From NCBI RefSeq assembly GCF_006345805.1, contig NC_042998.1, positions 156,736,001-156,800,000 on the forward strand: a stretch of DNA of 64,000 nucleotides, written 5' to 3'. Below the pieces are notes generated by a model, which saw nothing but the letters and a program-made list of their open reading frames with translations, had not been told where the DNA came from and searched no databases. Of this stretch, positions 11,230 to 55,309 are shown in pieces (within the stretch, counting starts at the first letter, position 1; each line of letters opens with the position of its first letter). The position numbers and the translations under genes are program-made. This stretch comes from Octopus sinensis. Its lineage: Eukaryota.

Positions 11230-14200
11230 CGCGAAGATGTCAAGGAACTGGTCTGCGAGGGAGTTGCAATTGCTCGTCCGCGCCTGGAAGATTGCCGAGG
11301 ATGATCGCCAAACAATATCATTGAAGCGCCGCTTAAGAGCAATGATTTCTCCAGGACCACCGCCCAGATAGAGCGAAAGAAACGCGAATTCCTCCGTTCA
11401 TACGCTCTAATCAGGCAACACATGGACACTCTGGACATCATCCTAGGAGGTGACTGCACCAGGGAAGACCAAAAGGATGGAGAAAACATCCAGGGCCCAA
11501 CAAAAGACACAAATGAGAGACCTGCAACCAAGGGACACAATGGCACATGTCCAGCTCCCAACACAACTGAAGACCAAAAAGGTGCGATGGCCACAAAAAA
11601 GGAAAGCACCCAAAAATCGATGGAAAACAAGAGGTAAAAGACAAGAAAACTAAAACAAAGACTGTTCAGAAAAAAACAGAACCCCAGTAAGAACTACAAG
11701 GGCAAAAGCAGAAACATCTGTAAATTCTACCTGAAGGGAGACTGCTAGCATGGGGTCGAAGGTGCAAACTGTCGTTTTGCACATCAGAAGCCCTGCCAAA
11801 AACTGCATGGACACAAGACAAAAATTCCTCCCTATGGGAGAACAAAAAGAAAAAGAAAAATATAGAAGAAGGAAAAATGGCACACGGACTATTCCTAAAA
11901 GACGATATGCAGATGTAGTGCGCGGTCCAAAAAAGATACTGCATAGGCCAACAAATGACCAGCTTCACCCAGATGTGAGAAGGGCAGCAGCTGAACACCA
12001 ATCTTTTTTGTGCACGGCACACAAAATTGTCCAGCAGCTGACCTGGCTACAAACACAAAGCTGGAACTACCACCACATAAGGCCACCACCAACAGATGCA
12101 GGATGGCCACCACAGACACCAACACACACACCACAAAAATATTTCTACTGAACGTAGGAGGGCTGCTGCGCGGCAACTGTAAAAGTAAAATCTCATTCCT
12201 TAGAGACCTTGCGGCATGCAATCAAGCTATATGCATGGCACTCATAGAAACGCATCTTGGACCTGATATAGGTGATGAAGAAATAAAAATACCGCAATAT
12301 GTTGCCATACGCTCAGATAGAAAAGGGAGGCGCCATGGTGGAGTTGCAATGTACATCCGAGATGACCTCACGCCTCAGGTCCTGTCATATTCAAACTCAG
12401 TGTGTGACACTCAAATTGTACATATAAGACAACTGAATATCGTCATATGTACTACATATCGCCCACCGGATGCCCCAAATCACACAGGCATGTTTGAAGA
12501 ATGCCTAACAAAATTAGGAGAAGTTCTCACCAACCTGGAACAACACAACAGTGTATTCTTCATGGGTGACTTTAACTTCCCCAATGTGGAATGGTCTGGG
12601 GGAGGGGCAGATGCTCCCAGGGATGACACACCATCAGCAGGCACAGGCAGAGTCCCTGCTCCATCTCACAAATGCCTCTTTCATAGAGCAAATAGTGCTG
12701 CAAACAACAAGGGCAAATAATATACTGGATCTCTGCTTCACAAACAATATGGATATTATCCATAATGTTAAAGTGATGCCGAAAATGATCTCGGATCACA
12801 ACATAATAGAGCTGTCTATGTATGGACCAAAAGCCCCCGCAGACACACAGCCTATACGAAGCATCCACAATCTCTCCAACTTAAACTTTCATAAAGCAAA
12901 TTGGAAGTTGATTGAGAAAGAGATCCTCAAACAGGATTGGCCTAAATGTCTCTCCACACCAGACATTGACATGAAACACAAACGCTTCATGTCCATAATA
13001 CAAGCTAAATGTGACAAATATGTCCCAGTGTGCAGGGCCAGCACACACAAAAACAAAAACAGGATCCCTAGAGAAAGGAAGATTCTTATGAGACGACGGA
13101 CAAGGATTGCGAACCTCCTGAGCAAGCACACCAAAAGTGGTGAGGAGTCTCGGCTTGAGAGAATGCTAATGGAAATTGAGAAAAGTCTGCATCAGTCTCA
13201 TGAAAAGGAGAGAGCAGATAAAGAAGCTTGGGTAATAGAAAATATAATGTCAAACCCGAAAGCTTTCTTTAAGTTTGCCAAAGAGACAGCCACAATGCAC
13301 CAGAGAATAGGACCTCTCTTCCAAAAAGATGGCTCCCTCACAGGAAATCCCATGAGGATAAGTGAAATACTGAACGAACAGTTCCAAAGTGTGTTCACTA
13401 CACCTCAAGGACATAGGCAAGTAAACAACCCAGAAGAATTCTTTGCCACTTTACCTGTGGTCAAAGAGGCAAAAATTGAGTACATCAACATTGAAAATGA
13501 TGATATCACACTGGCCATAGATGAGATTGGCACAAACTCAGCTGCTGGACCTGATGGATTTCCAGCGATCCTTCTCAAATCGTGCAAACAAGCCCTTAGG
13601 GTAATATGCCCTATCCATAAGGGAGGAAGCAGAGCAGATACTAAACATTATAGGCCTATCTCTCTGACCTCACACATCAGCAAAGTCGTGGAACGAATAG
13701 TCCGCAAGAAACTAATCATGTTCCTTGAAGAAAATTACTTGCTGACTGACACCCAGCATGGATTTCGACCAGGTAGAAGCTGCCTGACACAGCTCCTACA
13801 ACACTATGACTGGGTGTTAAAACAGCTACTAAATAGCTCAAATGTGGATGTGATATATCTCGACTTTGCAAAAGCCTTTGATAAAATCGACCATGGTATG
13901 ATTTGTCACAAATTGCGTGGTCTCGGCATAGGTGGAAAACTTGGAGAGTGGCTGCACAACTTCCTAAAAGATAGAAGGCAGGCAGTTGTGACCAATGGAG
14001 CCAGCTCCAAGGAAACACAAATAACAAGCGGTGTTCCACAGGGCACTGTCTTGGAACCACTGCTATTCATAGTGGCCCTTTCAGACATGCCATCAGTTGC
14101 TAAGATGGCCACCCTTGCTAGCTATGCAGATGACACAAAAGTTTCCCACACAATACAAAACGCTGGAAATATTGCACATCTGTAACAGGAGTTGAATACA

Positions 14201-26003: not shown

Positions 26004-27889
26004 AAAAGTAAAAAATATACAAACTGGGACAAGAACGTGAAACATTTAGAAGACGACACAAAAAACACGGACGGGACATTCGAAGCCCTCAATCATCAGT
26101 CAAGAACCGGATCATCTTCGCAATTTCGGCTGATTAATCTTGAGATTGCTCCGATCTTGGAAGAAAGCCTCGAATGTATACAACACAGGGGCGGAAAACG
26201 GACGATGTTACACGAATAAAAATACAAAAATACGTAAAAACAATAATGATAGCACGAATAAGAATACAAAATACGTAAAAACAATAATAACAAAACCAGG
26301 ACGTCAGGACGAGTTAAGTTTAGGGATGGCTATGGAAGAGTGCCTTAAGGTCACGGAGAACAAACAAATACGTGTTGCCACAATGACTGCTGGATGCGAA
26401 AAGGCAGTTGTCGCTGGCTGGTCACGTGAGCACAAGAGAGAGGAGAAAGGGACAGATGAAGAGAGAAAGAAGGGGAACAAGGGAGGAGAAGAAAGAGAGG
26501 GAAAGAGACAGGTCATGTGGGGTGTAAGGTGTGAGAAATGTGGGAGAGGGGGGACGGATGAAGAGAGAAAGAAAGAAGGGGTACAAGGGAGGAGAAGAGA
26601 GGGAAAGAGACAGATCAAGGGGAGTGCAAAGGGTGAAGGCAGAGAAATGTAGGAGAGGGGGGGGGAAAGAGACAGTGTAGTAGAGTCGTACCGGTGTTGG
26701 TGTGTTTATGTCCCCGTAACTTAGCGGTTCGCAAAAGAATTTGAGAGAATAAGTACCAGGCTTTAAAAAAATGGGGTCGATACATTCGACTGTAAATTCT
26801 TCAAGGCGGTGCCCTAGCATGGCCGCAGTCTAATGACTGAAACAAGTAAAATATCATATATATATATACACACATATACGCATTCCGAAGATGTACTTGC
26901 CTGTCAAGTGATTTGATTTGAGACCGTGCGTTGAAATTAAATTACAACGTGAAAGAGATATAGCCGTATTATTAGAACGGTCAATTGGCAGAATATTGAA
27001 CAAAATGTCTAACGGTTTTTCTTGCGATGTTTTGAGTTCTGGGTTCAATCCAGCGAGGTCAACTTCACTTCTAATCTTTTCGGAGTTTATAAAATAAATT
27101 ACTATTCAAATACTTCACTCGGCGGTATGGACTAATCCTCCATTCTAAAAAATTGTTGGTCTTGTGCCTAAATTGAGAGCAATTGTTATTGTTGTTGCTG
27201 TTATATATACATATATTTGATTATTTTTTTCGTTTACTATTTAACTCTTTTTGTAGGTCCTTGGTTCAGTTGGACTGTTTACAGCATAGTAAATCTGGCA
27301 CTGAAAAAACCTCTCTGGTTGTTCTAACCTTGATGTCTCAAGTGCAATAATATTGTTGCGTCGCACGCGGACCTCCGATGCCACCACGGGTCCCCCACAC
27401 AAACAGCCCGCAGACTGCTGGCCCAGAGAAGCTCGCGTGCGACAACGCTCAACAAATCAGAACCCTCTCCGGACTGTGAAGCAGCGAAACGAAGCCAGTA
27501 GAGCCGCCAACAACAACAAAAACACACAAAACGTTGCGTAGTAAAATTTAATATTTAACAACACAATTCTTCTCTTTTTCTCTTTCTTTTCTTTTGAAAC
27601 ACAGTTAACAATTCAAAGTTCTTTCTACTCTATCTTTTCTTAAAAAAAAAACAAAAAAAACAACAAAAACACATTTAACAACACAAAGTACGTTTTCTTT
27701 TAAAACATAAAAACATTTGCCAGCAACAAAGTTCTTTTCTTTTCTTCTCTGCAACTTCGGCAAAACCTGGCTAAGCGCAGGAGAGAAAGAAAGAGTTGGG
27801 AAAGAGAAATTATATATTCACTGTATGCATACGTGCAACTAAAATTTTATTATCGCCATCGCAATTTTTAAAAATTCATTGCGTAGAAC

Positions 27890-28061
27890 CAAATATAAAA
27901 AAAGAAACAACGACAACAACAAAAAATAATAATAAAAAAAACACAAATAGCAGTTAAACTAACAGTGAGACGCCATTTCCGCTCTGACAAACGGCTTTGT
28001 CAACTTGCAAACACCAGCAACTTTTTCTGTTTCTCTATAATACAAAATAATAATTGTAACT
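27890..28061 (+). promoter_or_regulatory. Putative core promoter/5' UTR of the FABP-like gene
   Basis: TATAAAA near 27895 and GACGCCATTTCCGC (YY1/ETS-like composite) near 27970, directly upstream of the ATG. The TSS was not determined. Confidence 0.35.
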
Positions 28062-28137
28062 ATGGAGCAATTTCTTGGGAAATAGATGGAAGTCAAAGAA
28101 GACATCGAATCCCAGCGAAAATTTATGGAGAAAATGG
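28062..28137 (+). CDS. FABP: FABP-like exon 1 (contains TAG at conserved Trp8, 28083-28085)
   Basis: ATG GAG CAA TTT CTT GGG AAA TAG ATG GAA ... AAA ATG G|gtatta; the phase-1 donor completes GAT (Asp) with exon 2. Confidence 0.8.
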
Positions 28138-28706
28138 GTATTATGACATTTTGATCTTTTTACCGTTCCTCTCATTTACTTTTGTACGTCTGCCGGCGGA
28201 GGTAAAGGTCACGTAGCGCACCACCTTTCAGTTTTGTGTGTGGTGTAGGGGGTGGGGCCACAGAAACCAACTTTTTCGACTGTGGAAATTCTGAATCTTC
28301 CAAAAAATCGGCATTTCAAAATTTAAATCCCACCCCAATTTCTTCATTTTTCACTTTTTTTCAATTTTCTTTTGGCGAAATACGTAGGAAAGTATGGAAA
28401 ATATGATTCTGAAAAAAAATTTGTAATTTAAATTTCGAAATGCCGATTTTTTTGCAGATTCGGAATCTCTGCAGTCGAAAAAGTGGGCTTCTTTAGACCC
28501 CCACCTCCCCCCCAAACCCCGAAAGTGGGGTGCGATCCATGTCCTTTACCTCCGCCCGCCTGCCTCTGAGTATAATGTATCACTTTGACTTTCTTAAAAA
28601 TAAATTTACCCTCTCTAAGAGCTCTCCATCAATCATCTATTTTCATTTTTGCTAGTGAGTTCCTTCGTCTTTAACATTCAGTCTCTAATCAATTATTAAT
28701 TATCCC

Positions 28707-31220
28707 CATGCAATCAAGCCTTATGCATAGCACTTACGGAAACACACCTGAAAAAGGACATAGCAGATGCGGAAATACACATACCACAGTATGTTGTACT
28801 ACGGACCGACAGAAAAGAAAGGAGTCATGGAGGAGTTGCTATGTACATCCGTGAGGACCTCACACTCCAGGTCCTTTTGTCATACTCAAATTCGGTGTGT
28901 GACACACTAATTGTACGTATAAGGCAACTTGGTATAGTTATATGTGCTACATATCGCCCTCCAGATGCCCCAAGCCATGTAGGCAAGTTTGAAGACTGCC
29001 TTATAAAAATAGATGAAGTTCTAGTCACATTAGAACAACACATAAGTGTACTTCTTATGGGAGACTTCAATCTACCCAATGTCAGATGGCCCGAGGGCCT
29101 TTCTCTCCCAGGAATGACACGATGCGAACGAGGACAGGCGAGGTCCCTCCTGAACCTCATCAACACTCTGTACATGGAGCGCGTAATACTCCAACCAACC
29201 AGGGCAGGTAACATACTGGATCTCTGCTTCACAAATAATATGGATCTCATCCATAATGTGAAAGTGACACCAACACTACTCTCGGATCACAACATGGTAG
29301 AGCTGACCATGTACGAGCCAAAGGAAAGCATGGACATGCAGCCTACAAGAAACTCTCAGAATCTTTCCTGCTTGAACTTCCATAAGGCAAACTGGAAACA
29401 AATTGAGAAAGAGATCCTCAAACAAAACTGGCCTGAATGTCTCTCCTCGCCAGACATCGACATGAAACTTCAACAATTCATGTCTGTAATGCAAGCCATA
29501 TGCTACAAATGTGTCCCAGAGAGAAAGGCCACTGTACACAGGAGCAAAATCCCCAGAGAGAGGAAAATTCTAATGAGACGGCGTACAAAAGTTTCAAATC
29601 TCCTAAACAAACAAATGTACGATATGTACGAGTTGCGTTCAATAAGTAATGCCCCTGACCCACTTCCCATAGCAGTAGAGCAACGAAACTTGGCACAGTT
29701 ATTAGTCTTTTTCTACATAGGAACCACCCAGAGTTACGCATTTCTCCCATCGTTTGATGCAGCTCTGAAGACCGTTTTTGTAGAAGACCCCCAGCTTGGT
29801 CCTCCAACCACGACGTGACTTCAGAAATCAAGGCTGCATCATCTGGGAAACGCTTTCCTTTCAAAAACAACTTCATGGCTGGGAAGAGGTGAAAATCAGA
29901 GGGTGCAGGTCAGGAGATGGGGGATGAGTTCATAGCCGCACGCCTGTGCTTCTGATCTGGCGACACGCGAGTTGTGGATCGGAGCGTTGTCCTGCAGGAG
30001 GAGGATGCCTTTGTTGATTTTGTTCCGCCTCTTGATTTTGATAGCTTCTCTTAATTTCCTCAAAAGTGAAGCATAATAGACTCCTGTAATTGTGGCAACC
30101 TTTGCCAAGAAATCTGTCATCACTACTCCGTCCTGGTCCCAGAAGACTGTGAGCATGACCTTGCCAGCGGAGGGCTGCACCCTTGCCTTCTTTGGAGGAG
30201 GTGAGTCACGGTGCTTCCACTGCATTGACTGGGCTTTGGTCTCTGGATCATAGTGATGGACCCAGGTTTCATCTTGTGTAATCAGTCTTTTGAAAAATTT
30301 TGACTCATCTTCTTGGCACATCTCCAAATTCATCCTCGCGCTATCGACGCGTTCTTGCTTCTGGAAAGGTGTGAGCAGCCTGGGAATCCATCTGGCAGAC
30401 ACCTTTTGCATATGCAAATGGTCACGAATGATAGTTTCCACAGACCCGGTACTAATCTTAACCACATGGGCTATTTGGTGAATAGTTATGCGTCGATCTT
30501 CCAAAATGGCAGCCTCAACTTGACGGACAGATGTCTCATCAATGGCAGAAGGGGGCGACCAGATCTGGGAGCTGTTTCCACAAAGTTCCGACCATGTTTG
30601 AATTCACGATGCCAGCGTTTTACAAGGTCATATGATGGGGCATCATCACCATAAGTTACTTTTATTTCATCAAAAGTCTCCCGTGGTGTGCGTCCTTTCA
30701 AATACAAAAACCGCATCACTGCTCGACACTCAACAGGCTCCGTTTCACACTTGACTCAGTTCAAACACCTGTAAATCAGAAACCACAATTAGTTCAGAGC
30801 TGTAATTTGCTACTTAATCTATAGAGGTATAGGTAATTGCACATGCAAAATTTCAGCTAGATCAAACAAATGCAAGTGGGTCAGAGGCATTACTTATTGA
30901 ACGCCCCTCGTAGGACAAGATACTGTGATAGCCTGGGCTTCCGAGGCCCACAGCTCTTCAATATCCTCCCGAAGAACTTCAGAGACCTGCATGGGGTGGA
31001 TGCAGAGGTCTTTAAAATAAAACTGGATCTCTTCTTGTCAGGTGTCCCAGATGAACCAACTTCACGGCAGGAAGTGCAGATGAGGGCAGCTGCATCGAAC
31101 TCTCTCATGCACCAAATGGCAATTGCTAAAAAGCATTCGTGAAGTAAAATCATGTAGCAACACCAAATGGCGGTGCCCCTGCATGGCCACAGCTTGTGAG
31201 CTGAAACTAGATAAAAAAAA
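28707..31220 (+). mobile_element. Second CR1-like LINE copy (APE part 28707-29628, 3' part 30913-31220), RT domain missing, interrupted by mariner
   Basis: ORF 28841 onward is homologous to 12215-13130 (MYIREDLT...YRPPDAP...MGDFNLP). 30913-31215 is homologous to 14805-15100. Confidence 0.9.
29629..30910 (-). mobile_element. mariner (Tc1/mariner, probably irritans-like) DNA transposon, full length 1282 bp, frameshifted
   Basis: Imperfect TIRs CGAGTTGCGTTCAATAAGTAATGCCCCTGACCCAC / GTGGGTCAGAGGCATTACTTATTGAACGCCCCTCG, flanked by TA on both sides. Transposase motifs RSGRP, ARWIPRLL, ITQDETW, LQDNAPIH occur in three frames. Confidence 0.95.
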
Positions 31221-33869
31221 ATCCTTGTTGACCATTGTTTATTTTTGCGGGTGTTGACCATGATCGTACATAGGTAGGTTTTTCGGTTAAACTCCAATGT
31301 TTGACCCGAAAAAAAAAATAGTGCAATAGGTGTAAAACGAATATGAAAAAAAAGCGCGCTGGCGAACGGGAGGCAGGTGGCGACTCGGAAAATTCACATC
31401 GGGAATATTCCGAGTCCTCTCACCATTTCCCCGTTTGTCGGCGAAAATTTTTTAATTCATATTCGTTTACTACACCTTATTTTACACCTAGTACTCTGTT
31501 TTTTTTTTTTCTCAGTTTTTCTGACGGAGTGGATGGGGTGCGGACTCTGATAATTCACACGATCCAGTAACTCCACTTCGACACCCGGTCACAAAACTGA
31601 AAAAAAAAATAGTATAATAGGTGTAAAACAACATGTAGTAAATGAATAGGAAGAAAAAAAATGCGCGCTGGCCGATTTTTTTGAAGATTCGGAATCTCCA
31701 CAGTCGAAAATGTTGGTTTCTGTAGCCACCCGCCGAAAAAATCCTTACAAAAACCACGTTAGTGTTTGTGTGTGAAATTATTATAATAAAACAAAATATC
31801 TTTTATATACCTCTTAAAAATCACTGGCTATATTAATTCCAGATTGCAGATTGTGGCATATTAGGTCACCGTAATTCATTCATCGACAAAAGATGTGAAT
31901 TTTCCGAGTCGTCACCCCACCTCCCGTTCGCCAGCGTACATTTTTTTCACATTCGTTTACTACATGTTGTCTTACACCTATTACACTACTTTTTTTCATT
32001 TTCTTTTTGCTTGGGTCAAACACTGGAGGTTAACCCATTTTCTAATAATTCCGGTTTCTCCCCCACCCCATCCCTTTTTTCCGAACAAAAATAAGAGATT
32101 TGAGGTATATTAGGCATCTGTAATGCATGCCGTTTGAAAGGTATATAAATACAATTTCATTAAAAGATATCCGTTTTCCTTAAAGTAACGAGGGAAAAAA
32201 TCGGACATTGTGAACATTCCGAAGTCTTCTACTCACTTCTTCAGAAGATATTTTACCCACAAATTTCGTTATAATGGTAATGTATGCCGTTTGAAAGGTA
32301 TTTATATAAAATTTCATTAAAAAAAAGACCCATTTTCCTAACAGTTATGAGGGAAAAACTCGGACCTTGTAAATTTTATTAAGTCCTCTCTTCCCCCACC
32401 CGTTGCTTACTGCGCAGTTTTGTTTTCATATTCGTTTTCTACACCCTTTTTTACACCCGTTGCACTATTTATTTTCTGATTTCGTTTCCAGGTAATAATG
32501 TCAACATTAACCAAGAATTTTAACATATTATCTCAGAGTGTAAGACTATTTACTTCATTAAAACTTATTACGTACTTGATGCAGTTGCGCACGATTGTTG
32601 TTTACATGCGTGTGTGTAGCTTCTGCAAAAACCTTCTCAAGACGTGGCAAGACTTCCGCCCGTCCCCCACCAAAAACCACCCTTAAAAAATATTTTTTTC
32701 GACACAACCCCTCTCCTTTTCGGCTGCGGGGAATACGAATCTGCAAAAAAATTTGCAAAAATCGACATTTCTAAATTACCATCCCACCCCCATTTCCTTC
32801 ATTTTAAATTTTTTTCCCAATTTTTTTTTTCAAAATATGCGGAAAAATACGGACATCATGATTCGGACAAAAATTTCAAAACATTTCTGTACTTACGGTT
32901 AGTGTTTTAGGGTTAGGGTTTTAGAGTCAGGGTTAGGGTTTTGGGGTTAGGGTTTTAGGGTTAGTATTGGGGAAAAAAGTCAAAATTGAAGAAGTTGGGG
33001 GAAATGGGGGGGGGGGATCACAATGCCGATTTTTGGCAATTTTCCGGAACCTCTGTATCCTAAAACGGAGATTTTTGGCAAAAAAAAAAAAAAATTACAA
33101 AAATAAACAAATTTGCTTAATTTCAGGAGATAGTTTTGTATAAGTGTACACTTTCTTTTTGAATATCTGCCTTTCTTTTCCCTCCTTGACCTATGCAAGG
33201 ATTCGTTATTATCAAGAAGGTGGCGAGAGTTGTCGGTATGCAAGACGAAATGCTTAGTGGCATTTCTCCCAGCTTTATGTTCTGAGTTCAAATTCCGCCG
33301 AGGTTAACTTTGCCTTCCATCCTTTTGGATGGAATAAGTACTAGTTAAGTGCTGGGATCGATATCATTGACTTGCCCACACCTGCCAAATTTCAGTCCTT
33401 AAATAGAAAGAATTATCAAGAAGAAAAATAAAAAGAGCAGTGTTATTAGTAAAAATTGTAAGTAGCTGGACTAATTGTTCAGTTAATATATTAACTCTTG
33501 TTCCTGTACATCAGGAACATAAATTTAATCTTTCTTTCTTTTTTTTTATTCTTATTTACTTTGAAAAAAGAATTATTTTATGTACAATCTTCAAATAAAA
33601 TTTATTGTTGTTTTAGTAATAACTAAATGAAAAATCAGAAAACAATTGAGATTGAATGGAACAAAAAATAAACTAACCAGTTATACATAAATGTCACATG
33701 GAAATATATGTAAATGTATGCAAGAATGTTAAATATTATACATAAAGGCCAATTAAATGTTTGTGTTTAAACTTACGTAATTTAAAATAGCTAATTCAAT
33801 AAAAAGGAATATATTTTACAAAAGAATAACAGAAAAAGGAAAAAGAAAAAGAGCATCAATGCAGCACCA

Positions 33870-34576
33870 AGTGCCTCGATTGGTTGCACATCACAAGGTT
33901 CAACAGAATCTACTGAAGCAAATCAACACACTTGCGCATTACCATTGGTGGTGGTTAGGCTAAGGCAGTGGATAACCAAGCACCCTCATGGGCATCACCT
34001 GGTACCATGGTAAGGTGAGCTACATCATTAGTGACCCAGTCACTCCAAATTTTTCAAATGTCACCAGCTGGAAGAAATAGGTCACTGCCAGGTCCTGATA
34101 CTTTAGGGTTTTGTTCCGTTCAGCTATAGAAGCAGTGACCTTCCTATTTACCACAGCATCCACGATGTGGGAGGGAGCAAGAGTCACACACTTCTTACCC
34201 AGGGACAGAGAGTAATACCATCTGGTCTCTTCCCATCACTTCTGAATAATTCCACTGGCTCTAGAACTGAGGGGATATTAATCCAAGCCAGGGCCAGCTT
34301 AATGGTTAAGTTTATCTCAGTGTGGTGAGCAAAAACCAACATTTAGGTGGAAAGACAGTTATTAACTCCCACTTTGAGTTTGATGGAGATGCAGAGCTCA
34401 TCTAGACTGAGTAGATCTCCAATGGTGGCCACAGGCAGGGCATCAATCCAGCCCCCACAAGAATTTTGCACTAGCAAAAAGTAGGTGACACCTTGAAAAT
34501 TGATCAGATTAATCAAGAAGAGAGTTGAAAGTGGCATCTGAATGTAGATTGTCACATACTCACAGCTTCCATTCAA
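33870..34576 (-). mobile_element. Restriction-like-endonuclease (CRE-like) non-LTR retrotransposon 3' remnant
   Basis: The minus strand reads GGWIDALPVATIG...IPSVLEPVELFRSDGKRPDGITLCPW...AERNKTLKYQDL, the EP-x-DGKRPDG-x-W and K-x-x-K-Y layout of RLE domains. Confidence 0.7.
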
Positions 34577-35664
34577 AGTGGATAGAGAGATTCTACAAAA
34601 CAGGATAACTATTTGAGTATTTCTCTGATAAGTTTAGTACAATCATTCTAGTTGATCATATAGTAAATTATTTCAAGTGAGCTGACATCATCATCATCAT
34701 CATCGTTTAACGTCTGCTTTCCATGCTAGCATAGGTTGGATGATTTGACTGAGGACTGGTGAACCAGATGGCTGCACCAGGCTCCAATCATGATCTCGCA
34801 GAGTTTCTACAGCTGGATGCCCTGCCTAACGCCAACCACTTCGAGAGTGTAGTGGGAGCTTTTACGTGCCACTGGCATGAGAGCCAGTCAGGCGGTACTG
34901 GCAACGGCCACGCTCAAATGGTGTTTTTTACATGCTGTCTTTTTTATAATAATTCTAGTTAATACTTATGTGTTAATTTATGAAAATATCAGTCAAGTTA
35001 GTGCTAGTTGCATAGTGCTCCCTGCATTATATGTTTACTAAAAATAATTATGTCAAGGAAAGTAATAATGACTAATATCATTTTAATTATTTCATCATCT
35101 CATCAACTCCAGACATGTTTCAGACTTGTTATGACATCAGCAAAGCAAAGTTCTCTGAAGTCCAAAAATATTTCCTTAAACAAAATATTAATTTTCTTAA
35201 CACTCACAACTCTTACAACCCTTACAACTCTTGTAATTATCGTGTGATATTAACAGTAATCAGCAAGCAGTTGAAAATGTCAGATAAACACTCTCTTGTT
35301 GAAATATTAAATAAACTGTACTGTTGTTCCATTAGGTTTCTGTTATCAAATCTCTTGCAGATATCTGGAAAAGGTGCAGCATTAAAGATAAAATTGTGAT
35401 GTAAATTGATGTCAAGTAGTTTGATTTCAACAAATGGTCTTCTACCTAAAAAACAAATTATATACCTTTTACCTTTTTAATGTGTTTCAGTCATTAGGCT
35501 GTGGCCATGCTGGGGCCTTGAACAGTTTTAGTTGAGTGAATCAGCCCCAGTACTTATTCTCTTAGTCTCATTTGTTGAACTGTAGGGATGTAAACGAACC
35601 AGCACTGGTTGTCAAGGGCTGGGTGCAATGGAACATACACAAATACAAAGATACACTCATCCAT

Positions 35665-37357
35665 ATCATCATCATTGTCATTGTCATTTAACGTCCGCTT
35701 TCCATGCTGGCATGGGTTGGATGGTTTGATTGAGGGCTGGCAAGCCAGAAGGCTGCACCAGGCTCCAATCTGATCTGGCAAAGTTGCTACAGCTGAATGC
35801 CCTTCCTAATGCCAACCACTCCAAGAGTGTTGTGGGTGTTTTTTACGTACCACCGGCATGGGAGCCAGTCAGATGGCACTGGCAACAATCTTGCTCAAAC
35901 GGTGCTTTTTATGTGCCATCGGCACGGGACCAGTCAGGTGGCACTGGCATTGACCACACTCGAATGGTGCTTTTTACATGCCAATGGCATGGGTACCAAT
36001 CAGGCAGTACTGTCATCGGCCACAACAATGACTTCAATTGACTCAACAGGTCTTCACAAGCCCAATGATTGAAAGGTACTCTTAAATGGGCCGGTTATGC
36101 TGCACTGGCATAGGCCACGCTTACAGTCTCACTTGGCCTGCCGGGTCTTTTCAAGCACAGCATATCTCCAAAGGTCTCGGTCACTTGTTTTCACCTCCAT
36201 GAGGCCCAGTGTTCGAAGGTCATGCTTCACCACCTCATCCCAGGTCTTCCTGGGTCTACCTCTTCCACAGGTTCCCTCTATTGCTAGGGTGTGACACTTC
36301 TTCACACAGCTGTCCTCATCCATATGCAGCACATGACCATACCAGTGCAGTTGTCTCTCTTGCATACCACATCTGATGCTTCTTATGTCCAACTTTTCTT
36401 TCAGGGTGCTTACACTCTGTCGTGTATGCACACTGACATTACGCATCTAGCAGAGCATACTGGCTTCATTCCTTGCAAGCTTATGCATGTCCTCAATAGT
36501 CATGGCCTGTGTTTTACTGCCATGGAAGCATGGCTGTTTGCACACATGTGTCATATAATCTACCTTTTACTCTGAGGGAGAAGCCCTTTGTCACCAGCAG
36601 ATGTAGAAGCTCTCTGAACTTTGCCCTGGCAATACTTATTCTAGCAGCTACACTCTCAGTGCATCCACCCCAGCTACTGACTTGGTCACCTCGGTAACAA
36701 AAGCTATCAACTACTTCTAGTTTTTCTCCCTAGCATGTGAAGGAAGCTGTTTTCTGCACATTTTCAGTGTTTATTGCTCCTGAACATTTGACACACACAA
36801 AACTATTTTACCAGTTAGTCTTCCTTTGATATTGCTGCACCTCTTATGTGTCCATAGCTTACACCAGGTACATCTTATGGAGTTTCTACCTATGCCTTTC
36901 CTACAGATTGAGCAGGGCCATCTACCTGAAGGGATTTGTGATTTGTCTGCCTTCCTACTATTAAGAGTTTTGGTTTTTGTTAGATTGACTCTAAGGCCAT
37001 TCAATTGTAGACCTTGCTTCCACACCTGAAACTTCTCCTCTAGTTCTGATAGTGCCTCAGCTATTAGAGCAAGGTCATCAGCATTAAGAAGCTCCCAGGA
37101 GCATCCTGTCTTGAATTCCTCTGTTATTGCTTGGAGGACTATGATGAATAAGAGGGGGCTGAGGACTGATCCTTGGTAGACCCCTACCCAGAATTCTTCA
37201 CTATACTCATTGCCAACCTTCACCTTACTGACAGCGTCCCTGTACATGACTTGTACAGCTCTCACTAACCACTCATCTTTCCCTAGTTTCCGCATTGACC
37301 ACCAGCTAAGGGATCGGGAGACCCTGTCAAAGGCTTTCTCTGTGTCAACAAAAGCCA
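35665..37357 (-). mobile_element. 5'-truncated RTE LINE copy (antisense, FABP intron 1)
   Basis: ORFs 36771-37391 and 36129-36446 are homologous to 49900-51130 (LAFVDTEKAFDRV...GRWPCSICRKG...GRGRPRKTW); (GAT)n-like tail. Confidence 0.92.
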
Positions 37358-39440
37358 ATATATATATATATATATATATACATATATACATACAACCTTA
37401 CATATGTAGATATATATGTGGGTGTGTGTATATCATCATCATCATCACTTAATGTCTGTGTTCCATGCTGGCATGGGTTAGATGGTTTAATAAGAGCTGC
37501 CCAGGCTCCATTTGTCTGTTTTGGCATGGTTCCTATGGCGAGATGCTCTTTCTAACACCAACCATTTTACAGAGTGTACTGGGTGATTTTATGCAATACT
37601 GGCATGGGTGTGTGTATGTGGCACTGGTATGAGTGTTTTTTTTTTGTGGCTCTGGCACCCATGAGCCTGTAAGGTTAGGAATACTAGCTGGAAAGGGATG
37701 CAGGGAACATACATATTCTTTTACTTGTTTCAGTCATCTGACTATGACTCTGCTGAACACCACCTTAAAAGGCTTTCTAGTTGAAGAAATTCACCCCAGG
37801 ACTTATTCTTTGTAAGCCTAGTACTTATTCTATCAGACTCTTTTGTTGAACCCCTAAGTTATGGGACATAAACACATTAACATCAGTTGTCAAGTGATGG
37901 TTGGGGCAAATACAGACACAAAGACACACTCATATAAATATATATATATTATATTGTTGTATTTCAGGATGGTAAATCAAAAAAAATTTTTGCCAAATAA
38001 ACACATGGATTATATATTTTCTCTTCACTTGTTTATTACTGATCTTATTTTATTATTTTAACTCATGTTCATTGTCCGGAAATCTTTCAAAAAGTGTCGC
38101 TGAAGAGGTCACAGATGTATGGCAAAAGATTTCCAGACAATGGACATGAGTTAAAATAATAAAATAAGAACAGTATTATAAGAGTTAAGAAAGAATATAT
38201 AGTGTAAGTGTTTATTTGGCAAAAAAAAAAAAATGATCATCGTGAAATACAACAATACCTGTTTCAACACATGATTTCACATTAGGAATCTTGCAAAAAT
38301 GATTTGATAAATGTGTATATATATATATATAAATATACACAACGGGCTTCTTATATGTACATGATAGGCTTCTTTCAGTTTACACTTACCAAATCCATTC
38401 ACAAGGCTTTGGTTGACCACTCACTATGGTGAAAGACACTTGCCCAATGTGCCATGCTATGGGATTGAACAGGGAATCATTTGGTTGGGAAGCAAACTTT
38501 TTGTCACAATACCGTGCTTGTGTCTCCACACACCTCATTTACAATTTTCCCCTTATCAGTTGCTATATTCCTTTGTATTTACACTGAATTTGTGACTCAT
38601 GGCAAAGAAAATATTGCCCAATGTTTATTTTCAAGAAATGCAGAATTCTGTTTATATAACTAAAATAGTTATGAAGTTTATAAAGATGACGTGGAATAAC
38701 CTTTTACACTTGAAGCTATGTCTTAGCTGAAATGAGTGAAGTGTGATTAACATGTGTTTTGATGTATACTAGATAATTTGATGTTAATCTTTTATTGAAT
38801 GTTCAGTCATTTCTCATTTCGGATCTGACATTTTTTATCTTTTACTTGTTTCAATCATTAGACTGTGGCTATGCTGGGGCACTGTCTTGAAGAATTTTTA
38901 GTCGAAGAAATCACCCCCAGTTATTTTTCTTTTTTTTTTTAAACCTGGTAGTTATTATGTCGATCTCTTATGCCAAACTGCTAAGTTATGGGGGCATAAA
39001 CACACCAACACTGGTTGTCAAGTGATGGTGAGGGACAAACACATATGTACACATGCACTCACATGTACACACATGCACTCATGTACACACACACACACAC
39101 ATGCACGCACACACATGATGGGCTTCTTTCATTTCTGTCTACCAAACCCACTCACAAGGCCTTGGTCAGCCTGAGGCTATAATAAAAGACACTTCCTCAA
39201 GGTATCATGCAGTGGGGCTGAACCCATAACTACGTGGTTGGGAAACAACCTTCTTACCACACAGCCATGCCTGAAGAACCAATTTCATATAGGAATATTG
39301 AACAGAAATACTTAGAAATGTGTAAAAGCATTTATTTTAATGACTATTGACACAGCTTTCCTGTCTTATCTTATTTGTTAATTGTCTTATTTTTCTTTGT
39401 TAGTTTTGTTGATTTTTACATGAGAATTTTTATTTTACAG

Positions 39441-39622
39441 ATATTCCAACAGAAACAGCAAACAAAATGTTGGCCTCAACAGGTTTTGTAGACACTGTAA
39501 AAGATGGAAATCAGTTTAAAATGACTACAGGTTATAAAGAAGATCCTTCATTAACTAAAATTTATAATTTCAAGTTGAATGAAACTTTCAGTGGAGTTGA
39601 CAACTTTGGAATAAAATTTAAA
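39441..39622 (+). CDS. FABP: FABP-like exon 2
   Basis: Acceptor tttttattttacag|, 182 nt open (2 nt + 60 codons), donor AA|gtcagt; contains the FKLNETF motif. Confidence 0.9.
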
Positions 39623-40032
39623 GTCAGTTCACTTTTTCATTTCATATATCATTATTATATTTATCAACTTGTTTCTTGTTAACTATTTCTACCATATACC
39701 ACACACACATACATGTACACACACATACAAATCACATGCACAGACAAACAACAGTCACCACACACACATACACATACTCCTTCCCATTTCACATTACCCA
39801 TACGCACATAACTGAACAATAACATTGACACAGACCTGACTGTGTTATATATGAGTATATAAGTATAGATATAATCTGAGTTCATTATATATAATCTGCT
39901 TTCATTGATTATGACAAATCAGCTACAATCTAATTCTATTTATGTTCTATTATTTAGTATTTTCTTACATTACAGTTTTGCAGAATGTCTCCTTACTTCA
40001 ACTATTAATATCCTGATGTTTTAATTTTCTAG

Positions 40033-40140
40033 CTGTTCTGTAAAGTTGAAGATAACAAAAATGGTATGATACATGTACTGATTATTATAATCATACAATT
40101 AAGAGTGTTCGAGAAATTGTTGATGGTTATTTTGATTGTT
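40033..40140 (+). CDS. FABP: FABP-like exon 3 (internal compensated frameshift)
   Basis: Acceptor ttaattttctag|, donor GTT|gtaact, 108 nt. The splice frame starts LFCKVEDNK, but the homologous TDYYNHTIKSVREIVDGY is in another frame. Confidence 0.75.
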
Positions 40141-40849
40141 GTAACTATAGATTGAATATTTTTATACAAAATATTTTGTGTGTGTGTGTGTGTGTGTATT
40201 TGAAATGAATTGAACTAGTTTCAGCTCACAAGCTGTGGCCATGTTGGGGCACCATGTATATGTATATATATATATATATATATATGTATATACACATACA
40301 TGTGTGTGTGTGTGCTTCTAAAAAAACAAATGTAAGGGTGTATATTTTATATATCTATGTGTATGTGTATATATATACGCACATATATATATATAGATAT
40401 ATGCATGTTGATGCATATGCATGTATGTGTGTATGTGTATGTATATGTATGTATGTGTGTATATATGTATGTGTGTATATATGTTTATTTGTATGTATAT
40501 ATGTATATGTTTGTGTATATATATATATGTATATATGTAAGAGTGAGAGCCAGATTGAAATTAAAACAATAAATATTATTTTGGTTTTGATGTATATATA
40601 ATTTATTTTTCTATGCCCGTATAGAGTTGGTTTCGTTTTTCGTGTTGCTTTATAAGTATTGATAAATAACGGTATATATAAGTGTATATATATATATATA
40701 ATATATATATATATATATGTGAGTATAGAAATAATGGGGTATATCTTATATATATAAAGCTGAAGTTTTCTGTGTGTGTGTGTATGGACAATTCCATAAA
40801 ACAGCAATTATCTTCTAAACCTTTCATCTGATTTTGTTGAAATTTTAAC

Positions 40850-41381
40850 AAGACTTCTGCCAATCACCCGCCCCCACCAACCACCCTTTTAAAAATTTTT
40901 TTTCGACACAGACCACCCCCTCCTTTCGCCTATGGGGAAGATGAATCTGCAAAAAAATGGGCAAAAATCAGTATTTTTAAATTACCACCCACCCCTATTC
41001 CCTTCATTTTTTACTTTTTTCAGAAATATTTTTTTTTTCAAAATATGTGGAAAAATACAGAGATTATGATTCTGAAAAAAATTTCCAAAGATTTTGGTAA
41101 AATTTTTTATAAGAATTTTTTTGGTTCCTAAATATGCAGAAAAATATGGACATTATGATCCAGACAAAAATTTCAAAACATTTCTGTAGTTACGGTTAGG
41201 GTTTTAGGGTTAGGGTTAGTGTTGGAGAAAAAGTAAAAATTGAAGAATTTGGAGGGGAAACGGGGGAAGAAAATTTCACAATGCCTTTATTTGGCAATTT
41301 TCCAAAACGTTAGGCAAAAAAAATTTTTTTTTAATAAACAAATTTGGGAGAAAATGTTGGGGTGTTAAGGGCAGAAGTCTT
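40850..41381. mobile_element. MITE-like repeat with short TIRs and an internal TTAGGG-like tract (related copies 575-829 and 32649-33115)
   Basis: Ends AAGACTTCTGCC / GGCAGAAGTCTT; shared internal blocks AAAAAATTTTTTTTCGACACA and TTTTGGCAATTTTCC; GGTTAGGGTT repeats. Confidence 0.6.
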
Positions 41382-42234
41382 TCCATTTTACAGAGCTTTG
41401 TCTGCCATCCAGCAAGGACCACATCTACTTATTTTTTTGAAAATCGATATTGCAGCCTGTTGAGCAGTGCAAGACGTGAGATGAGTTGTACCTACATGTG
41501 AGCTTTACTCAATCAGCTGTTAAGTGCACGCAAATATTGCATGAAAATGCTGCAGTAATTTAGGTATGAAAACAAGACATTTTTTATTGCTGGGCATAAA
41601 CGTTTTCTTAAGCAAATTTTCAAAAGTTTTTTTTTTACATTGGTTGGTAACATTAGAGTGGTCATTTTGTTATCTTATATAGTCAACGGATCTTTTCCTT
41701 TTGAACGGCACATGTCAATACAATTTCTAGTTAACTAAACACTTTTAAACTTCGTATACTGGTAGAATGTGTTTATAAAACATCATTTTTTCTTGGCTTT
41801 ATTGAGAAAATTCTATATGTTGTAACATATTTCCACTTTAATTTCAAGCATTTCGGCAATTTTAACCAATCGCTGACCTCCATTGACGTAAACAACATTC
41901 CGTGCTGTATGAATATGTCCTCGTTTAAGAAACAGATTGGGTTTATTTACATTTACGAAGAAAAAAAGATACCCTTCCCCCACCCCTAACCCCAACTCAC
42001 CCTAACTCTGACCCTAAATCTAAAATAAATTGAAATGCAATAGATCGATACTAGGGTTATAATTATGGGTGACAATTTCATACGACACTTCTACGGAAAA
42101 TGGGATTTTTTTCTAGCGGTGTCAAATGAAAATGTCACCCATAATTATAACCCTAGTATCAATCTATTGCATTTCAATCTATTTTAGATTTAGGGTTAGA
42201 GTTAGGATGAGTTAGGGTATAGTCTTCTAGCACA

Positions 42235-43379: not shown

Positions 43380-45170
43380 AACTCATTTAACTGCAACTCG
43401 GACAACATGCAGTAGTGCTGCCGCAACTGCTGCCACAAGAGCTGCAGAGACACCTGACTAACGCGCATCTCGAAATACACACAATAACTGTAGAGACACC
43501 TGATCAGCGTGCATCTCGAAATATACACAATACTGCTGTGACTACTGCCACAAGAGCTGCAGAAACACTTGAACAAGGCATGCGTTGCCAGGTTTCTGAT
43601 TGTGCTTATAGAACTGCTGCTATATCTTCTGAAACAGTGGCTGAAAGAACTACTCGCCTTCAAACAATTGCGAATCATAAAGCCGTTCTACTTGGTGCAT
43701 TGAAGCCAACGAGGAATAGATGGACCTTTAAAGCCTTCCAATATGATCCCTCTGAAAATTATGCTGACCACAAAGATGTTACCATTGGTCGTATCTCCAA
43801 AACCTGTCTACACTGTAATGCCCTAACTTGGCTGGGAGAGCCTATTGGTCTATGCCGCACAAATGGAAAGGTCTGTCTACCCAACACCCCTGAAACTCCA
43901 CAGCCTTTAAAGTCCCTTCTGCTTGGTGAGCATCCTTATTCTCACGATTTCATGAACCGAATACGGGCATATAATTCTGCATTTCAAATGCCAAGTTTTG
44001 GTCATAAGTCCATTTCATACAGAAATTTTAATCCCACTTTTACCATTCAGGGACAAGTTTATCATTTAATCGGCTCTCTTCAACCAACAGATGACTCACC
44101 TCATAGTTTTCTTCAGATAAACTTCATTGGACCAGAGACTGAGCAAATCACATGTAGAGTTGCTTTTGCTGCAGGCATAGATGCGGCTGTTCTTGGACCT
44201 CTTCAGTAAATGCTTCATGAGCATAAGCACTATGTCAACCAATTAAAAACGGCTATTCAACAACGCTGGGCAGATAATGCCAACTTCAAGGTTGTTATTA
44301 GAAGTGACAGGACTCCTGTTGGAGAACAAATAAGTGTCTCTCAGTCGATCTCCGACGAAGCTTCGTCATTTATTCACCATTATGCTGGTTTTCTGCAACT
44401 TGGTTAACGCGCTTTCATTGTGGAATAAAAACAGGGACCACATGTGCCACGATATATGACTTCAATCCTGTCAGGCCACTAAAAATTCCACCACTGCTTT
44501 TACCCTCTCTGTGTATAATGCAGGTCTTATTCTCTTGGAGGAATTGGTTGTGGCAACTGGAGGCCAAAGTTTGGAGGCATACTGCCTTCCTTCTCCAGAT
44601 TGAATCCAAACGCAAACCTTTAATCGACATATCCTTAAAGAAACATGCTATGACAAAACCAAATTTCGAAAATACATATCTGTCAATGAGCCACTCCTCA
44701 ATCAAGATCTAAAATATGTTTACAAATCTGTTTTTCACAAGGTACATAGCAATAAAGGTGGGATCATCTTCATAGATGCACCTGGGGGGACAGGAAAAAC
44801 TTTTTTGCTTAACTTTATTCTTTCTAATATAAGACAAAATGGTGACATTGCACATGCTGTTGCCTCCTTCGTGGGTGGACAGCACACTTGACCTTCAAGA
44901 TACCTTTGAACGTTGTCCATCAAGAAAACCCTATTTGCAATATTTCACATTCTTCTGATGAAACTACACTGCTGAAAAAATGTAAATTAATTGTTTGGGA
45001 TGAGGTGACCATGTCCCATAAAACCTCTTTTCAGGCACTAGATGCCAGAATGAAAGATCTCAGTTCAAACGACAATGTTTTAGAGGAGCCGTTTTTCTTC
45101 TCAAAGGTGACTTCAAACAGACAGTTCCCATTGTACCAAATGGATCACTTGCTGATGAAGTCTTTCTAAA
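43380..45170 (+). mobile_element. Helitron RepHel remnant
   Basis: CLHCNALTW...NGKVCLP...IRAYNSAFQM...FTIQGQVYHLIGSL; downstream DAPGGTGKTFLL (Walker A) and LIVWDEVTMSHK of a Pif1-like helicase. Confidence 0.9.
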
Positions 45171-47445: not shown

Positions 47446-47485
<40 letters not shown>

Positions 47486-55258: not shown

Positions 55259-55309
55259 ACATCAACTTGTAATGGAAACACATTGGTTTCAAAATTTAAA
55301 AGAGAATGA
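55259..55309 (+). CDS. FABP: FABP-like exon 4
   Basis: Acceptor ttttctattatttacag|, then TSTCNGNTLVSKFKRE-TGA, which aligns without gaps to the 16-residue last exon of FABPs. Confidence 0.8.
   Translation, partial: TSTCNGNTLVSKFKRE

What the first reader, a model, noticed from the sequence alone, without database searches (positions are those of the whole stretch)
28083..28085. Conserved Trp8 of the FABP-like gene is a UAG: dead allele or A-to-I-rescued stop codon?
Seen: FLGK-TAG-M sits exactly where FABPs have FLGxW, while splice sites and the rest of exons 1, 2 and 4 are clean. An imperfect exon-internal hairpin is possible (28075-28088 with 28103-28115), but it places the A opposite G, which is not ADAR's preferred mismatch. 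Established: coleoid cephalopods recode extensively by ADAR editing, UAG is the preferred ADAR triplet, and UAG-to-UIG (Trp) recoding is known (HDV amber/W site; premature-stop correction in filamentous fungi). Inference: expression could be gated by editing, or translation could start at the ATG immediately after the stop. The simpler explanation is pseudogenisation, which the exon 3 frameshift supports.
Basis: partly seen in the sequence, partly recalled or inferred. Interest (0 to 1): 0.72.

Follow-up and report, generated by a model that had tools for sequence, protein, structure and literature searches.

The report
Dead octopus fatty-acid-binding-protein gene copy
The stop codon is real and replaces a tryptophan that every related octopus gene keeps, but the same gene also has two frame-breaking insertions in exon 3, so it is most likely an ordinary, fairly recently dead gene copy and not a gene switched on by RNA editing.

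Summary
TAG at 28083-28085 is codon 8 of a four-exon, + strand FABP-like gene: exons 28062-28137, 39441-39622, 40033-40140 and 55259-55309, with GT/AG splice sites and intron phases 1, 0, 0. All nine octopod relatives retrieved have Trp at this position, and the two O. bimaculoides paralogues read at DNA level have TGG. The lesion is therefore a G-to-A change.

The window comes from the Octopus vulgaris/sinensis lineage. The gene is a fourth, dispersed paralogue of a three-gene tandem cluster on another chromosome. That cluster has a confirmed FABP fold.

Exon 3 carries two insertions relative to the paralogues: +2 in an A run at 40056-40060 and +1 near 40122-40133. Their net effect is +3, so the spliced frame stays open, but codons 96-119 are scrambled. 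Editing UAG to UIG would not restore a family-like protein.

The RNA around the site is no more structured than shuffled sequence. No complementary sequence was found in intron 1, and the local hairpin puts the A opposite a G.

A second, independent assembly (about 0.5-0.8% mismatches) has identical exons 1-3 with all three lesions. They are therefore not assembly errors.

Best reading: an unprocessed pseudogene, misannotated as the chimeric protein CAI9717418.1. RNA-level editing was not testable here.

The parts
27877..27905 (+). Conserved upstream motif (GCGTAGA ... TATAAAA), a putative core promoter about 165 nt upstream of the ATG
   Evidence: MAFFT alignment of the 200 nt upstream of the ATG with paralogues A (O. 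bimaculoides) and B (O. bimaculoides, O. vulgaris) shows this block conserved. A promoter role is inferred, not tested.
28062..28137 (+). Exon 1 (76 nt; MEQFLGK*MEVKEDIESQRKFMEKM plus 1 nt; donor G|gtatta, phase 1)
   Evidence: The length and donor sequence match paralogues A and B.
28083..28085 (+). In-frame TAG at codon 8, where relatives have TGG (Trp)
   Evidence: The identical exon 1 is present in O. vulgaris GCA_951406725.2.
28086..28088 (+). ATG immediately after the stop (possible reinitiation codon; T at -3, G at +4)
   Evidence: Read directly. No evidence that it is used.
28192..28559 (.). Foldback element in intron 1 (arms 28192-28328 and 28426-28559), 55 nt after the exon 1 donor. 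It would form long dsRNA in the pre-mRNA but does not include the exon.
   Evidence: the repeat finder pairs I4 (80 nt, 83% complementary) and I24 (31 nt, 84%).
39441..39622 (+). Exon 2 (182 nt; (D)IPTETANK...NFGIKFK; phase 1 in, phase 0 out)
   Evidence: phmmer against 1.84 billion representatives found four family members.
40033..40140 (+). Exon 3 (108 nt, phase 0 to 0). The ends are in frame. The middle (about 40060-40131) matches the family only in the shifted frame (WYDTCTDYYNHTIKSVREIV).
40056..40060 (+). A run carrying a +2 insertion (AAC AAA AA TGG, where paralogues have AAC AAA TGG)
   Evidence: DNA comparison with paralogues A and B. The same sequence is present in the second assembly.
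40122..40133 (+). Stretch carrying a +1 insertion (19 nt where relatives have 18, probably in the T run 40130-40133). It restores the frame for LIV and exon 4.
   Evidence: and protein comparison with P0005 and P0013. The exact inserted base cannot be assigned.
55259..55309 (+). Exon 4 (TSTCNGNTLVSKFKRE, stop TGA 55307-55309; acceptor tatttacag|)
   Evidence: tblastn against P0004, P0005 and P0006; sequence; DNA comparison.
11422..11581 (+). First coding exon of the annotated chimeric model CAI9717418.1 (P0001). That model is spliced to exon 2, skips exon 1, and reads exon 3 straight through its donor.
   Evidence: tblastn of P0001 against the window, 100% over residues 1-53; accession. No Pfam hit.

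Best explanation
This is an unprocessed (intron-containing) pseudogene of a fourth, dispersed paralogue ('D') of an octopod-specific FABP-like subfamily.

The subfamily has three intact tandem members on another chromosome. Copy D evolved under purifying selection for most of its history and was then disabled by three lesions:
- a TGG-to-TAG nonsense change at codon 8;
- a +2 insertion in exon 3;
- a +1 insertion in exon 3.

The two insertions cancel each other in length, but they scramble codons 96-119, which form about two to three strands of the beta barrel. Splice sites and a promoter-like motif are still intact because the inactivation is recent relative to the age of the duplication.

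Shown here: the lesions, their position relative to intact relatives, and their presence in two independent assemblies. Inferred: that no functional protein is made.
For: - **TAG at the Trp codon.** All nine relatives have Trp, and the two paralogues read at DNA level have TGG.
- **Exon 3 insertions.** Nucleotide comparison with two paralogues shows the +2 and +1 insertions. As written, the spliced ORF reads NGMIHVLIIIIIQLRVFEKLLMVI where the family has WYD..VREVVGD.
- **What the scrambled stretch covers.** It spans strands 95-101 and 109-116 and the start of strand 119-126 in the AlphaFold model of paralogue P0005 (pLDDT 93.5). That model matches solved FABP structures at TM 0.82-0.88.
- **Second assembly.** Exons 1-3, with all three lesions, are string-identical in O. 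vulgaris GCA_951406725.2. That assembly differs from the window by about 0.5-0.8% mismatches, many indels and a LINE insertion. The lesions are therefore neither assembly errors nor private to one individual.
- **No intact orthologue found.** A profile search of 5.8 billion proteins returned no intact orthologue of D. The only protein from this locus is a chimeric model that avoids exon 1.
- **Intact paralogues exist.** They lie in tandem elsewhere in the genome.
- **No RNA features of an ADAR substrate**.
Against: - **No sign of relaxed constraint.** dN/dS of D against paralogues A and B is 0.45-0.47, no higher than A against B (0.61). D has no excess of changes at family-invariant columns: 4, against 3-11 in the intact members.
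- **Much of the gene is still intact.** All six splice sites and the promoter-like motif are preserved. The spliced frame is open apart from the TAG.
- **No exon differences between assemblies.** Exons 1-3 show no difference between the two assemblies, where about 2-3 would be expected. This is not significant.
- **Transcription was not examined.** Neither transcription nor editing could be tested.
Confidence: 0.8

Rival explanations
1. Segregating null haplotype, or a very recent species-level loss. Intact D alleles (TGG, uninterrupted exon 3) still exist in the population or in sister species, and the two assemblies happen to carry the dead haplotype.
For: There is no signal of relaxed constraint. 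Splice sites and the promoter motif are intact. Heterozygosity in O. vulgaris is high, at 1.22% (PMC10700109).
Against: Three independent lesions on one haplotype suggest some time spent without selection. Both available assemblies carry all three. No intact orthologue appears in the O. vulgaris, O. sinensis or O. bimaculoides proteomes.
Confidence: 0.08
2. Restorative ('harm-permitting') A-to-I editing. ADAR converts UAG to UIG (Trp) in some tissues, allowing translation of a 138-residue protein whose exon 3 segment is novel.
For: - The ancestral base was G, and the triplet is UAG.
- The harm-permitting model predicts fixation of such G-to-A changes in coleoids (PMC6881472).
- Coleoid editome pipelines already join ORFs across internal UAG-to-UGG stop-loss edits (PMC8382921).
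- The spliced ORF is otherwise open.
- A long foldback lies 55 nt downstream in intron 1 and could recruit ADAR.
Against: - Local structure is not significant (z = -0.88).
- The best long-range duplex in intron 1 (-27.9 kcal/mol) falls within the range of shuffled queries (-25.1 to -32.7).
- The target A sits opposite G in the only hairpin. From established knowledge, ADAR disfavours this partner.
- Editing cannot repair the exon 3 insertions, so the product lacks about two to three barrel strands.
- Median restorative editing levels in coleoids are below 2.5% (PMC6881472).
Confidence: 0.03
3. The locus is expressed in another form: reinitiation at ATG 28086 giving an N-terminally truncated product, an exon 3-skipped isoform (exon 3 is 108 nt, phase 0-0), the annotated TE-led chimera, or a non-coding RNA.
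For: - The ATG directly follows a 7-codon ORF.
- Skipping exon 3 would keep the frame.
- The EVM/PASA annotation produced a model joining an upstream exon to exon 2.
Against: - Every such product lacks essential parts of the 10-strand barrel.
- The first ATG has the stronger context (A at -3, G at +4) and the second has T at -3.
- The first exon of the chimeric model has no recognisable domain.
- No transcript evidence was available.
Confidence: 0.06
4. Sequencing or assembly artefact. The true genome has TGG and an uninterrupted exon 3.
For: The O. vulgaris reference was built from ONT R9.4.1 reads, which are prone to homopolymer errors. Both exon 3 insertions lie in A or T runs.
Against: That assembly was polished with Illumina reads. 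Two assemblies that differ at about 0.5-0.8% of bases have exactly the same three lesions. A G-to-A substitution and a +2 in a 3-nt run are not typical ONT errors.
Confidence: 0.02

Closest known systems
Octopod FABP-like tandem genes (O. vulgaris CAI9739553-55; O. bimaculoides XP_014781209 and XP_014781207; O. sinensis XP_029649724, XP_029650085 'gastrotropin' and XP_029649993; Argonauta hians homologues)
   Same: The exon count is the same, and the exon lengths of 76/182/108 nt and intron phases 1, 0, 0 match. The frame-corrected protein is 56-64% identical. The N-terminus MEQFLGKW and the C-terminus C(D/N)G..VSKFKR are shared.
   Different: The window copy lies on a different chromosome (the 215.6-Mb OX597815.1 versus the 50.6-Mb OX597836.1). 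It carries TAG for Trp8 and two frameshifting insertions in exon 3. It has no correct protein annotation.
Intracellular lipid-binding proteins (FABP/CRBP; Pfam Lipocalin_7 PF14651; e.g. E. granulosus FABP1 1O8V, human FABP3, Sm14)
   Same: The paralogue model is a 10-strand barrel with a helix-turn-helix lid, matching solved FABPs at TM 0.82-0.88. The four-exon gene structure with phases 1, 0, 0 is the canonical FABP structure (own knowledge). An aromatic residue follows G-x near the N-terminus.
   Different: Sequence identity is only about 14-27%. There is a two-residue insertion before helix I. The window's corrected protein scores 18.1 bits, below the Pfam cut-off of 25.4.
Restorative or stop-loss A-to-I editing in coleoids (harm-permitting model, Jiang & Zhang 2019, PMC6881472; internal UAG-to-UGG edits handled in Shoshan et al. 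2021, PMC8382921) and premature-stop correction in filamentous fungi
   Same: A G-to-A substitution created a UAG at a conserved Trp codon in a coleoid. This is exactly the class of site those models describe.
   Different: No evidence of editing is available. There is no supporting dsRNA. The gene has further lesions that editing cannot repair.

Membership tests
FABP / intracellular lipid-binding protein (Pfam Lipocalin_7, PF14651) | Profile match above the curated cut-off | tested here: inconclusive
   The frame-corrected conceptual protein scores 18.1 bits (E = 0.0027) against a cut-off of 25.4. Paralogues P0005 (27.6 bits) and P0010 (34 bits) pass, while P0004 and P0006 give no hit. A home-made six-sequence FABP HMM gave 20.7 bits against a maximum of 13.7 in 2000 shuffles, but that used an earlier model with a wrong exon 4.
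FABP / intracellular lipid-binding protein (Pfam Lipocalin_7, PF14651) | Ten-strand beta barrel with an N-terminal helix-turn-helix | tested here: met
pLDDT 93.5; secondary structure is strand A, two helices, then nine strands. Top PDB matches are all FABPs, TM 0.82-0.88.
FABP / intracellular lipid-binding protein (Pfam Lipocalin_7, PF14651) | Four exons and three introns at conserved positions (phases 1, 0, 0) | tested here: met
   Exons are 76/182/108/51 nt with GT/AG sites. Lengths of exons 1-3 and intron phases match paralogues A and B.
FABP / intracellular lipid-binding protein (Pfam Lipocalin_7, PF14651) | Uninterrupted reading frame encoding the whole barrel, including the N-terminal aromatic residue | tested here: not met
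   TAG at codon 8. Codons 96-119 are out of register because of the +2 and +1 insertions.
Unprocessed (duplicated) pseudogene | Disabling lesions relative to intact relatives, with introns retained | tested here: met
   One nonsense change plus two frameshifting insertions. There are three introns at the family positions.
Unprocessed (duplicated) pseudogene | Lesions are real and shared between independent genomes | tested here: met
   Exons 1-3 are string-identical in GCA_951406725.2 (L004), which otherwise differs from the window by about 0.5-0.8% mismatches plus indels. Exon 4 lies outside L004.
Unprocessed (duplicated) pseudogene | Relaxed selective constraint (dN/dS approaching 1) | tested here: inconclusive
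   By the Nei-Gojobori method, D-A is 0.47, D-B is 0.45 and A-B is 0.61. Private changes at invariant columns are not in excess. The test averages over the whole history since duplication and has little power for a recent loss.
Unprocessed (duplicated) pseudogene | No functional transcript or protein | not testable with these tools
   No RNA-seq or proteomic data are reachable. Exact-ORF look-ups in the assemblies found nothing.
ADAR recoding site (restorative UAG to UIG) | Favourable neighbours (5' U, 3' G) and an ancestral G | tested here: met
   The triplet is UAG. Paralogues have TGG, and all nine relatives have Trp.
ADAR recoding site (restorative UAG to UIG) | Target A embedded in a stable double-stranded RNA | tested here: not met
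   MFE is -20.1 kcal/mol, z = -0.88, with 39 of 200 shuffles folding as well. The A lies in an internal loop, or opposite G107. The best duplex with 13 kb of intron 1 is within the range of shuffled queries. No inverted-repeat arm overlaps the exon among the 25 longest of the 261 pairs found.
ADAR recoding site (restorative UAG to UIG) | A>G mismatch between RNA and DNA | not testable with these tools
   No transcriptome reads are available.
ADAR recoding site (restorative UAG to UIG) | The edited message encodes a viable family-like protein | tested here: not met
   With W at codon 8, the product still carries 24 scrambled residues across strands 95-126.

The most novel reading that the evidence does not exclude
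The D copy is not dead. Its spliced frame is open apart from UAG, and the two exon 3 insertions compensate each other, creating a new hydrophobic segment. Expression of this altered lipid-binding-like protein would then be gated by tissue-specific UAG-to-UIG editing, perhaps helped by ADAR recruitment to the intron 1 foldback 55 nt away. It would be a coleoid example of premature-stop-correction editing, as in filamentous fungi.
Probability: 0.03. Interest if true: 0.8.

Novelty: new member of a known kind. Interest (0 to 1): 0.2.

Why it matters
As it stands, the main value is annotation. It identifies a fourth, dead member of an octopod-specific FABP-like subfamily. It also shows that the deposited protein CAI9717418.1 is a chimeric artefact built around a pseudogene.

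The site is a cheap test for the harm-permitting view of coleoid editing, because a TGG-to-TAG change at a UAG triplet is the most extreme 'restorable' mutation. The exon 3 lesions make it a poor candidate for a functional rescue.

If RNA data did show strong editing here, it would more likely illustrate promiscuous editing of a dying gene than regulated expression.

Tried and rejected
- **Vertebrate FABP queries.** tblastn of human FABP3, FABP4 and CRABP2 against the window gave only noise. A crude FABP HMM on stop-free segments only weakly flagged exon 2.
- **Wrong exon 4.** My first candidate, at 56843-56905 and chosen by a C-terminal regex, was wrong. The true exon 4 at 55259-55309 emerged only once octopus relatives were available. 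The Pfam scan and HMM score that used the wrong model are superseded.
  - The search for homologous proteins with exons 1+2 found no candidate. This is a sensitivity limit of the word index, because P0001 exists.
  - Rfam found nothing in the window.
- **Search for an editing-complementary sequence.** RNAduplex of the 41 nt around A28084 against 27000-40200 was no better than shuffled queries.
- **Exact-ORF look-ups.** Two window ORFs overlapping exons 1 and 2 were not on record, so no further individuals or transcripts could be recruited.
- **Rejected ideas.**
  - A TATA-like motif at about 28035 is not the promoter. The conserved TATA lies about 165 nt upstream.
  - Stop-codon readthrough: no known readthrough context follows UAG-A (own knowledge).
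  - The absence of stops in the shifted stretch of exon 3 is not evidence of selection, because paralogue B read in the same shifted frame is also open for about 24 codons (read by hand).
- **Left open.** Whether the window is O. sinensis or a second O. vulgaris individual could not be settled. It shows about 0.5-0.8% mismatches to O. vulgaris. For comparison, O. vulgaris and O. sinensis differ by 1.7% at another locus, and within-species heterozygosity is 1.22%.

Full report
**1. Observation**

The sequence at 28062-28088 reads ATG GAG CAA TTT CTT GGG AAA TAG ATG, so TAG at 28083-28085 is codon 8 of an open reading frame. Vertebrate FABP queries and a crude FABP HMM gave only weak signals. 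Even so, exon 2 could be recognised at 39441-39622, with a phase-1 acceptor that fits the exon 1 donor.

A phmmer search of exon 2 against 1.84 billion representative proteins returned four hits:
- P0001 is 100% identical over exon 2. It is O. vulgaris CAI9717418.1.
- P0004 is an intact 138-residue O. bimaculoides protein that begins MEQFLGKW.

Further searches recovered the rest of the family. There are three tandem genes (A, B and C) in each of O. vulgaris, O. sinensis and O. bimaculoides, and two homologues in Argonauta hians. All nine have Trp where the window has the stop. At DNA level, O. bimaculoides A and B read AAA TGG. The stop is therefore a G-to-A change at a family-invariant Trp codon, not a chance TAG.

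**2. Gene model**

tblastn of the intact relatives against the window places four collinear exons:

| Exon | Coordinates | Length |
|---|---|---|
| 1 | 28062-28137 | 76 nt |
| 2 | 39441-39622 | 182 nt |
| 3 | 40033-40140 | 108 nt |
| 4 | 55259-55309 | 51 nt |

All introns are GT/AG with good pyrimidine tracts. The phases are 1, 0, 0, and the lengths of exons 1-3 match paralogues A and B. My earlier exon 4 guess at 56843 was wrong and is withdrawn.

A block about 165 nt upstream of the ATG (GCGTAGA...TATAAAA, 27877-27905) is shared with the paralogues and looks like the core promoter.

**3. Exon 3**

Nucleotide comparison with A and B shows three differences:
- AAC AAA AA TGG where the paralogues have AAC AAA TGG. 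This is a +2 insertion in the A run 40056-40060.
- An in-frame 3-nt length difference in a stretch whose length varies across the family.
- 19 nt where relatives have 18 between the codons for ...REIV and the donor. This is a +1 insertion at 40122-40133, probably in the T run.

The net change is zero, so exon 3 is still 108 nt. As written, the spliced message is open from ATG to TGA except for the TAG. Codons 96-119 read NGMIHVLIIIIIQLRVFEKLLMVI instead of the family's WYD...VREVVGD.

The lack of stops in the shifted stretch is compatible with chance. Paralogue B read in the same shifted frame is also open for about 24 codons.

**4. What the family is**

Paralogues P0005 and P0010 pass Pfam Lipocalin_7. 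The window's frame-corrected protein reaches 18.1 bits, below the cut-off of 25.4. An AlphaFold model of P0005 (pLDDT 93.5) shows strand A (residues 6-11, containing W8), two helices and nine further strands. Its best PDB matches are all FABPs, at TM 0.82-0.88.

The scrambled stretch in the window copy covers strands 95-101 and 109-116 and the start of strand 119-126. A product with W restored at codon 8 would still lack about two to three barrel strands.

**5. History**

The frame-corrected D protein is 56-64% identical to A, B and C, and 63% and 48% identical to the two Argonauta proteins. It branches deep within the octopod clade, and its branch is not unusually long.

Nei-Gojobori estimates are as follows:

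| Pair | dS | dN/dS |
|---|---|---|
| D-A | 0.58 | 0.47 |
| D-B | 0.59 | 0.45 |
| A-B | 0.42 | 0.61 |

D has 4 private changes at columns invariant in the other lineages, against 3-11 for the intact members. D was therefore a constrained gene for most of its existence, and the lesions are recent on that timescale. One nonsense change plus two indels is roughly what a few per cent of neutral divergence would produce in about 410 nt. This last point is my inference.

**6. Are the lesions real?**

The look-up of P0001 returned O. vulgaris GCA_951406725.2, OX597815.1:55221498-55271050. This locus is not identical to the window:
- Megablast blocks are 93-99.6% identical. The mismatch rate is 0.48% in the 24-kb block that contains the gene and about 0.8% overall.
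- There are dozens of indels.
- Window segment 47470-52267, which carries a LINE, has no counterpart.

Despite this, exons 1, 2 and 3 are string-identical, including TAG, the A5 run and the extra T. The window thus represents a second individual, a second haplotype or the sister species. For scale, O. vulgaris and O. sinensis differ by 1.7% at the B locus, and O. vulgaris heterozygosity is 1.22%.

The lesions are not assembly artefacts of the ONT-based, Illumina-polished reference, and they are not private to one animal.

**7. The editing hypothesis**

The premises hold: the organism is a coleoid, the triplet is UAG, and the ancestral base was G. The idea also has precedent. The harm-permitting model predicts G-to-A substitutions that are tolerated because they are edited back (PMC6881472). 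Coleoid editome pipelines already join ORFs across internal UAG-to-UGG stop-loss edits (PMC8382921).

The local evidence is negative:
- The 121 nt around the site fold at -20.1 kcal/mol with z = -0.88, and 39 of 200 shuffles fold at least as well.
From established knowledge, this is the mismatch ADAR disfavours.
- The best duplex between the 41 nt around the site and 13 kb of intron 1 (-27.9 kcal/mol) lies within the range for shuffled queries, -25.1 to -32.7.
- A long foldback at 28192-28559 lies 55 nt past the donor. It could attract ADAR to the pre-mRNA, but it does not contain the exon.
- Editing cannot repair the exon 3 insertions.

Editing itself, meaning RNA-DNA mismatches, could not be examined with these tools.

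**8. Annotation**

The only protein on record from this locus, CAI9717418.1, joins an exon at window 11422-11581 to exon 2. That exon has no recognisable domain. The model skips exon 1 and reads exon 3 in frame 0 through its donor to a TGA. This is the behaviour expected of an evidence-combining pipeline faced with a pseudogene. No orthologue of D was found in the O. sinensis or O. bimaculoides proteomes.

**9. Verdict**

The most likely explanation is a recently inactivated, unprocessed pseudogene of a fourth octopod FABP-like paralogue (confidence about 0.8). The alternatives are:
- a segregating null haplotype (0.08);
- some other expressed form (0.06);
- editing-gated expression (0.03);
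- an assembly artefact (0.02).

The finding is ordinary in kind. Its residual interest is as a quick RNA-seq check of restorative editing at a nonsense codon.

Noticed in passing
window 1-53753 versus L004 (O. vulgaris GCA_951406725.2 OX597815.1:55221498-55271050): The window is not the deposited O. vulgaris reference sequence. Alignment blocks are 93-99.6% identical, with about 0.5-0.8% mismatches and many indels. It is a second individual or haplotype, or O. sinensis. Which one could not be settled.
   Followed up: partly
window 47470-52267 (LINE ORFs 47953-49554 and 49558-51129, + strand): A LINE with an endonuclease domain (Exo_endo_phos) and a reverse transcriptase domain (RVT_1), in two long ORFs separated by a single stop, sits in intron 3. 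This segment has no aligned counterpart in the O. vulgaris reference locus (L004 46880-48068). That suggests a recent or polymorphic insertion.
   Followed up: partly
window 29627-30912, nested in 28841-29818: A mariner-like element is inserted into a LINE endonuclease ORF inside intron 1. It has 39-nt terminal inverted repeats (92% complementary) and a Transposase_1 ORF at 29896-30504 on the minus strand.
   Followed up: partly
window 28192-28559: A foldback or MITE-like inverted repeat (arms of about 135 nt, 83-84% complementary) begins 55 nt after the exon 1 donor. A related arm recurs at 31671-31734.
   Followed up: partly
window about 56960-57290: A near-perfect palindrome with arms of about 150 nt around a short loop near 57125, seen while reading the sequence 1.7 kb downstream of the gene's stop codon. 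It is probably another foldback element.
   Followed up: no
window 44604-44888 (+), with the long ORF 43391-44206 upstream: A PIF1-like helicase fragment (Pfam E = 1.6e-12) lies in intron 3. It is consistent with a Helitron remnant. The upstream 272-residue ORF has no Pfam hit.
   Followed up: partly
window 32885-32960, 41187-41225, 41985-42210: Short interstitial TTAGGG-like (telomere-type) arrays are embedded in copies of a repeated element that also recurs near 28230-28520 and 40850-41130.
   Followed up: no
window 11422-11581 and 39441-40155: The deposited protein CAI9717418.1 ('Hypothetical predicted protein', O. vulgaris) is a chimeric model. It joins an upstream exon of unknown origin to exons 2-3 of the pseudogene, with exon 3 read out of the family frame and past its donor.
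   Followed up: yes
L001 (O. bimaculoides CM046623.1), L002 (O. vulgaris OX597836.1), L003 (O. sinensis CM016881.1): The intact family members form a tandem cluster with genes in opposite orientations. Gene size varies from about 5 kb to 15.5 kb. In O. bimaculoides paralogue B, the Trp at alignment column 98 is Cys (GGKCYD).
   Followed up: partly
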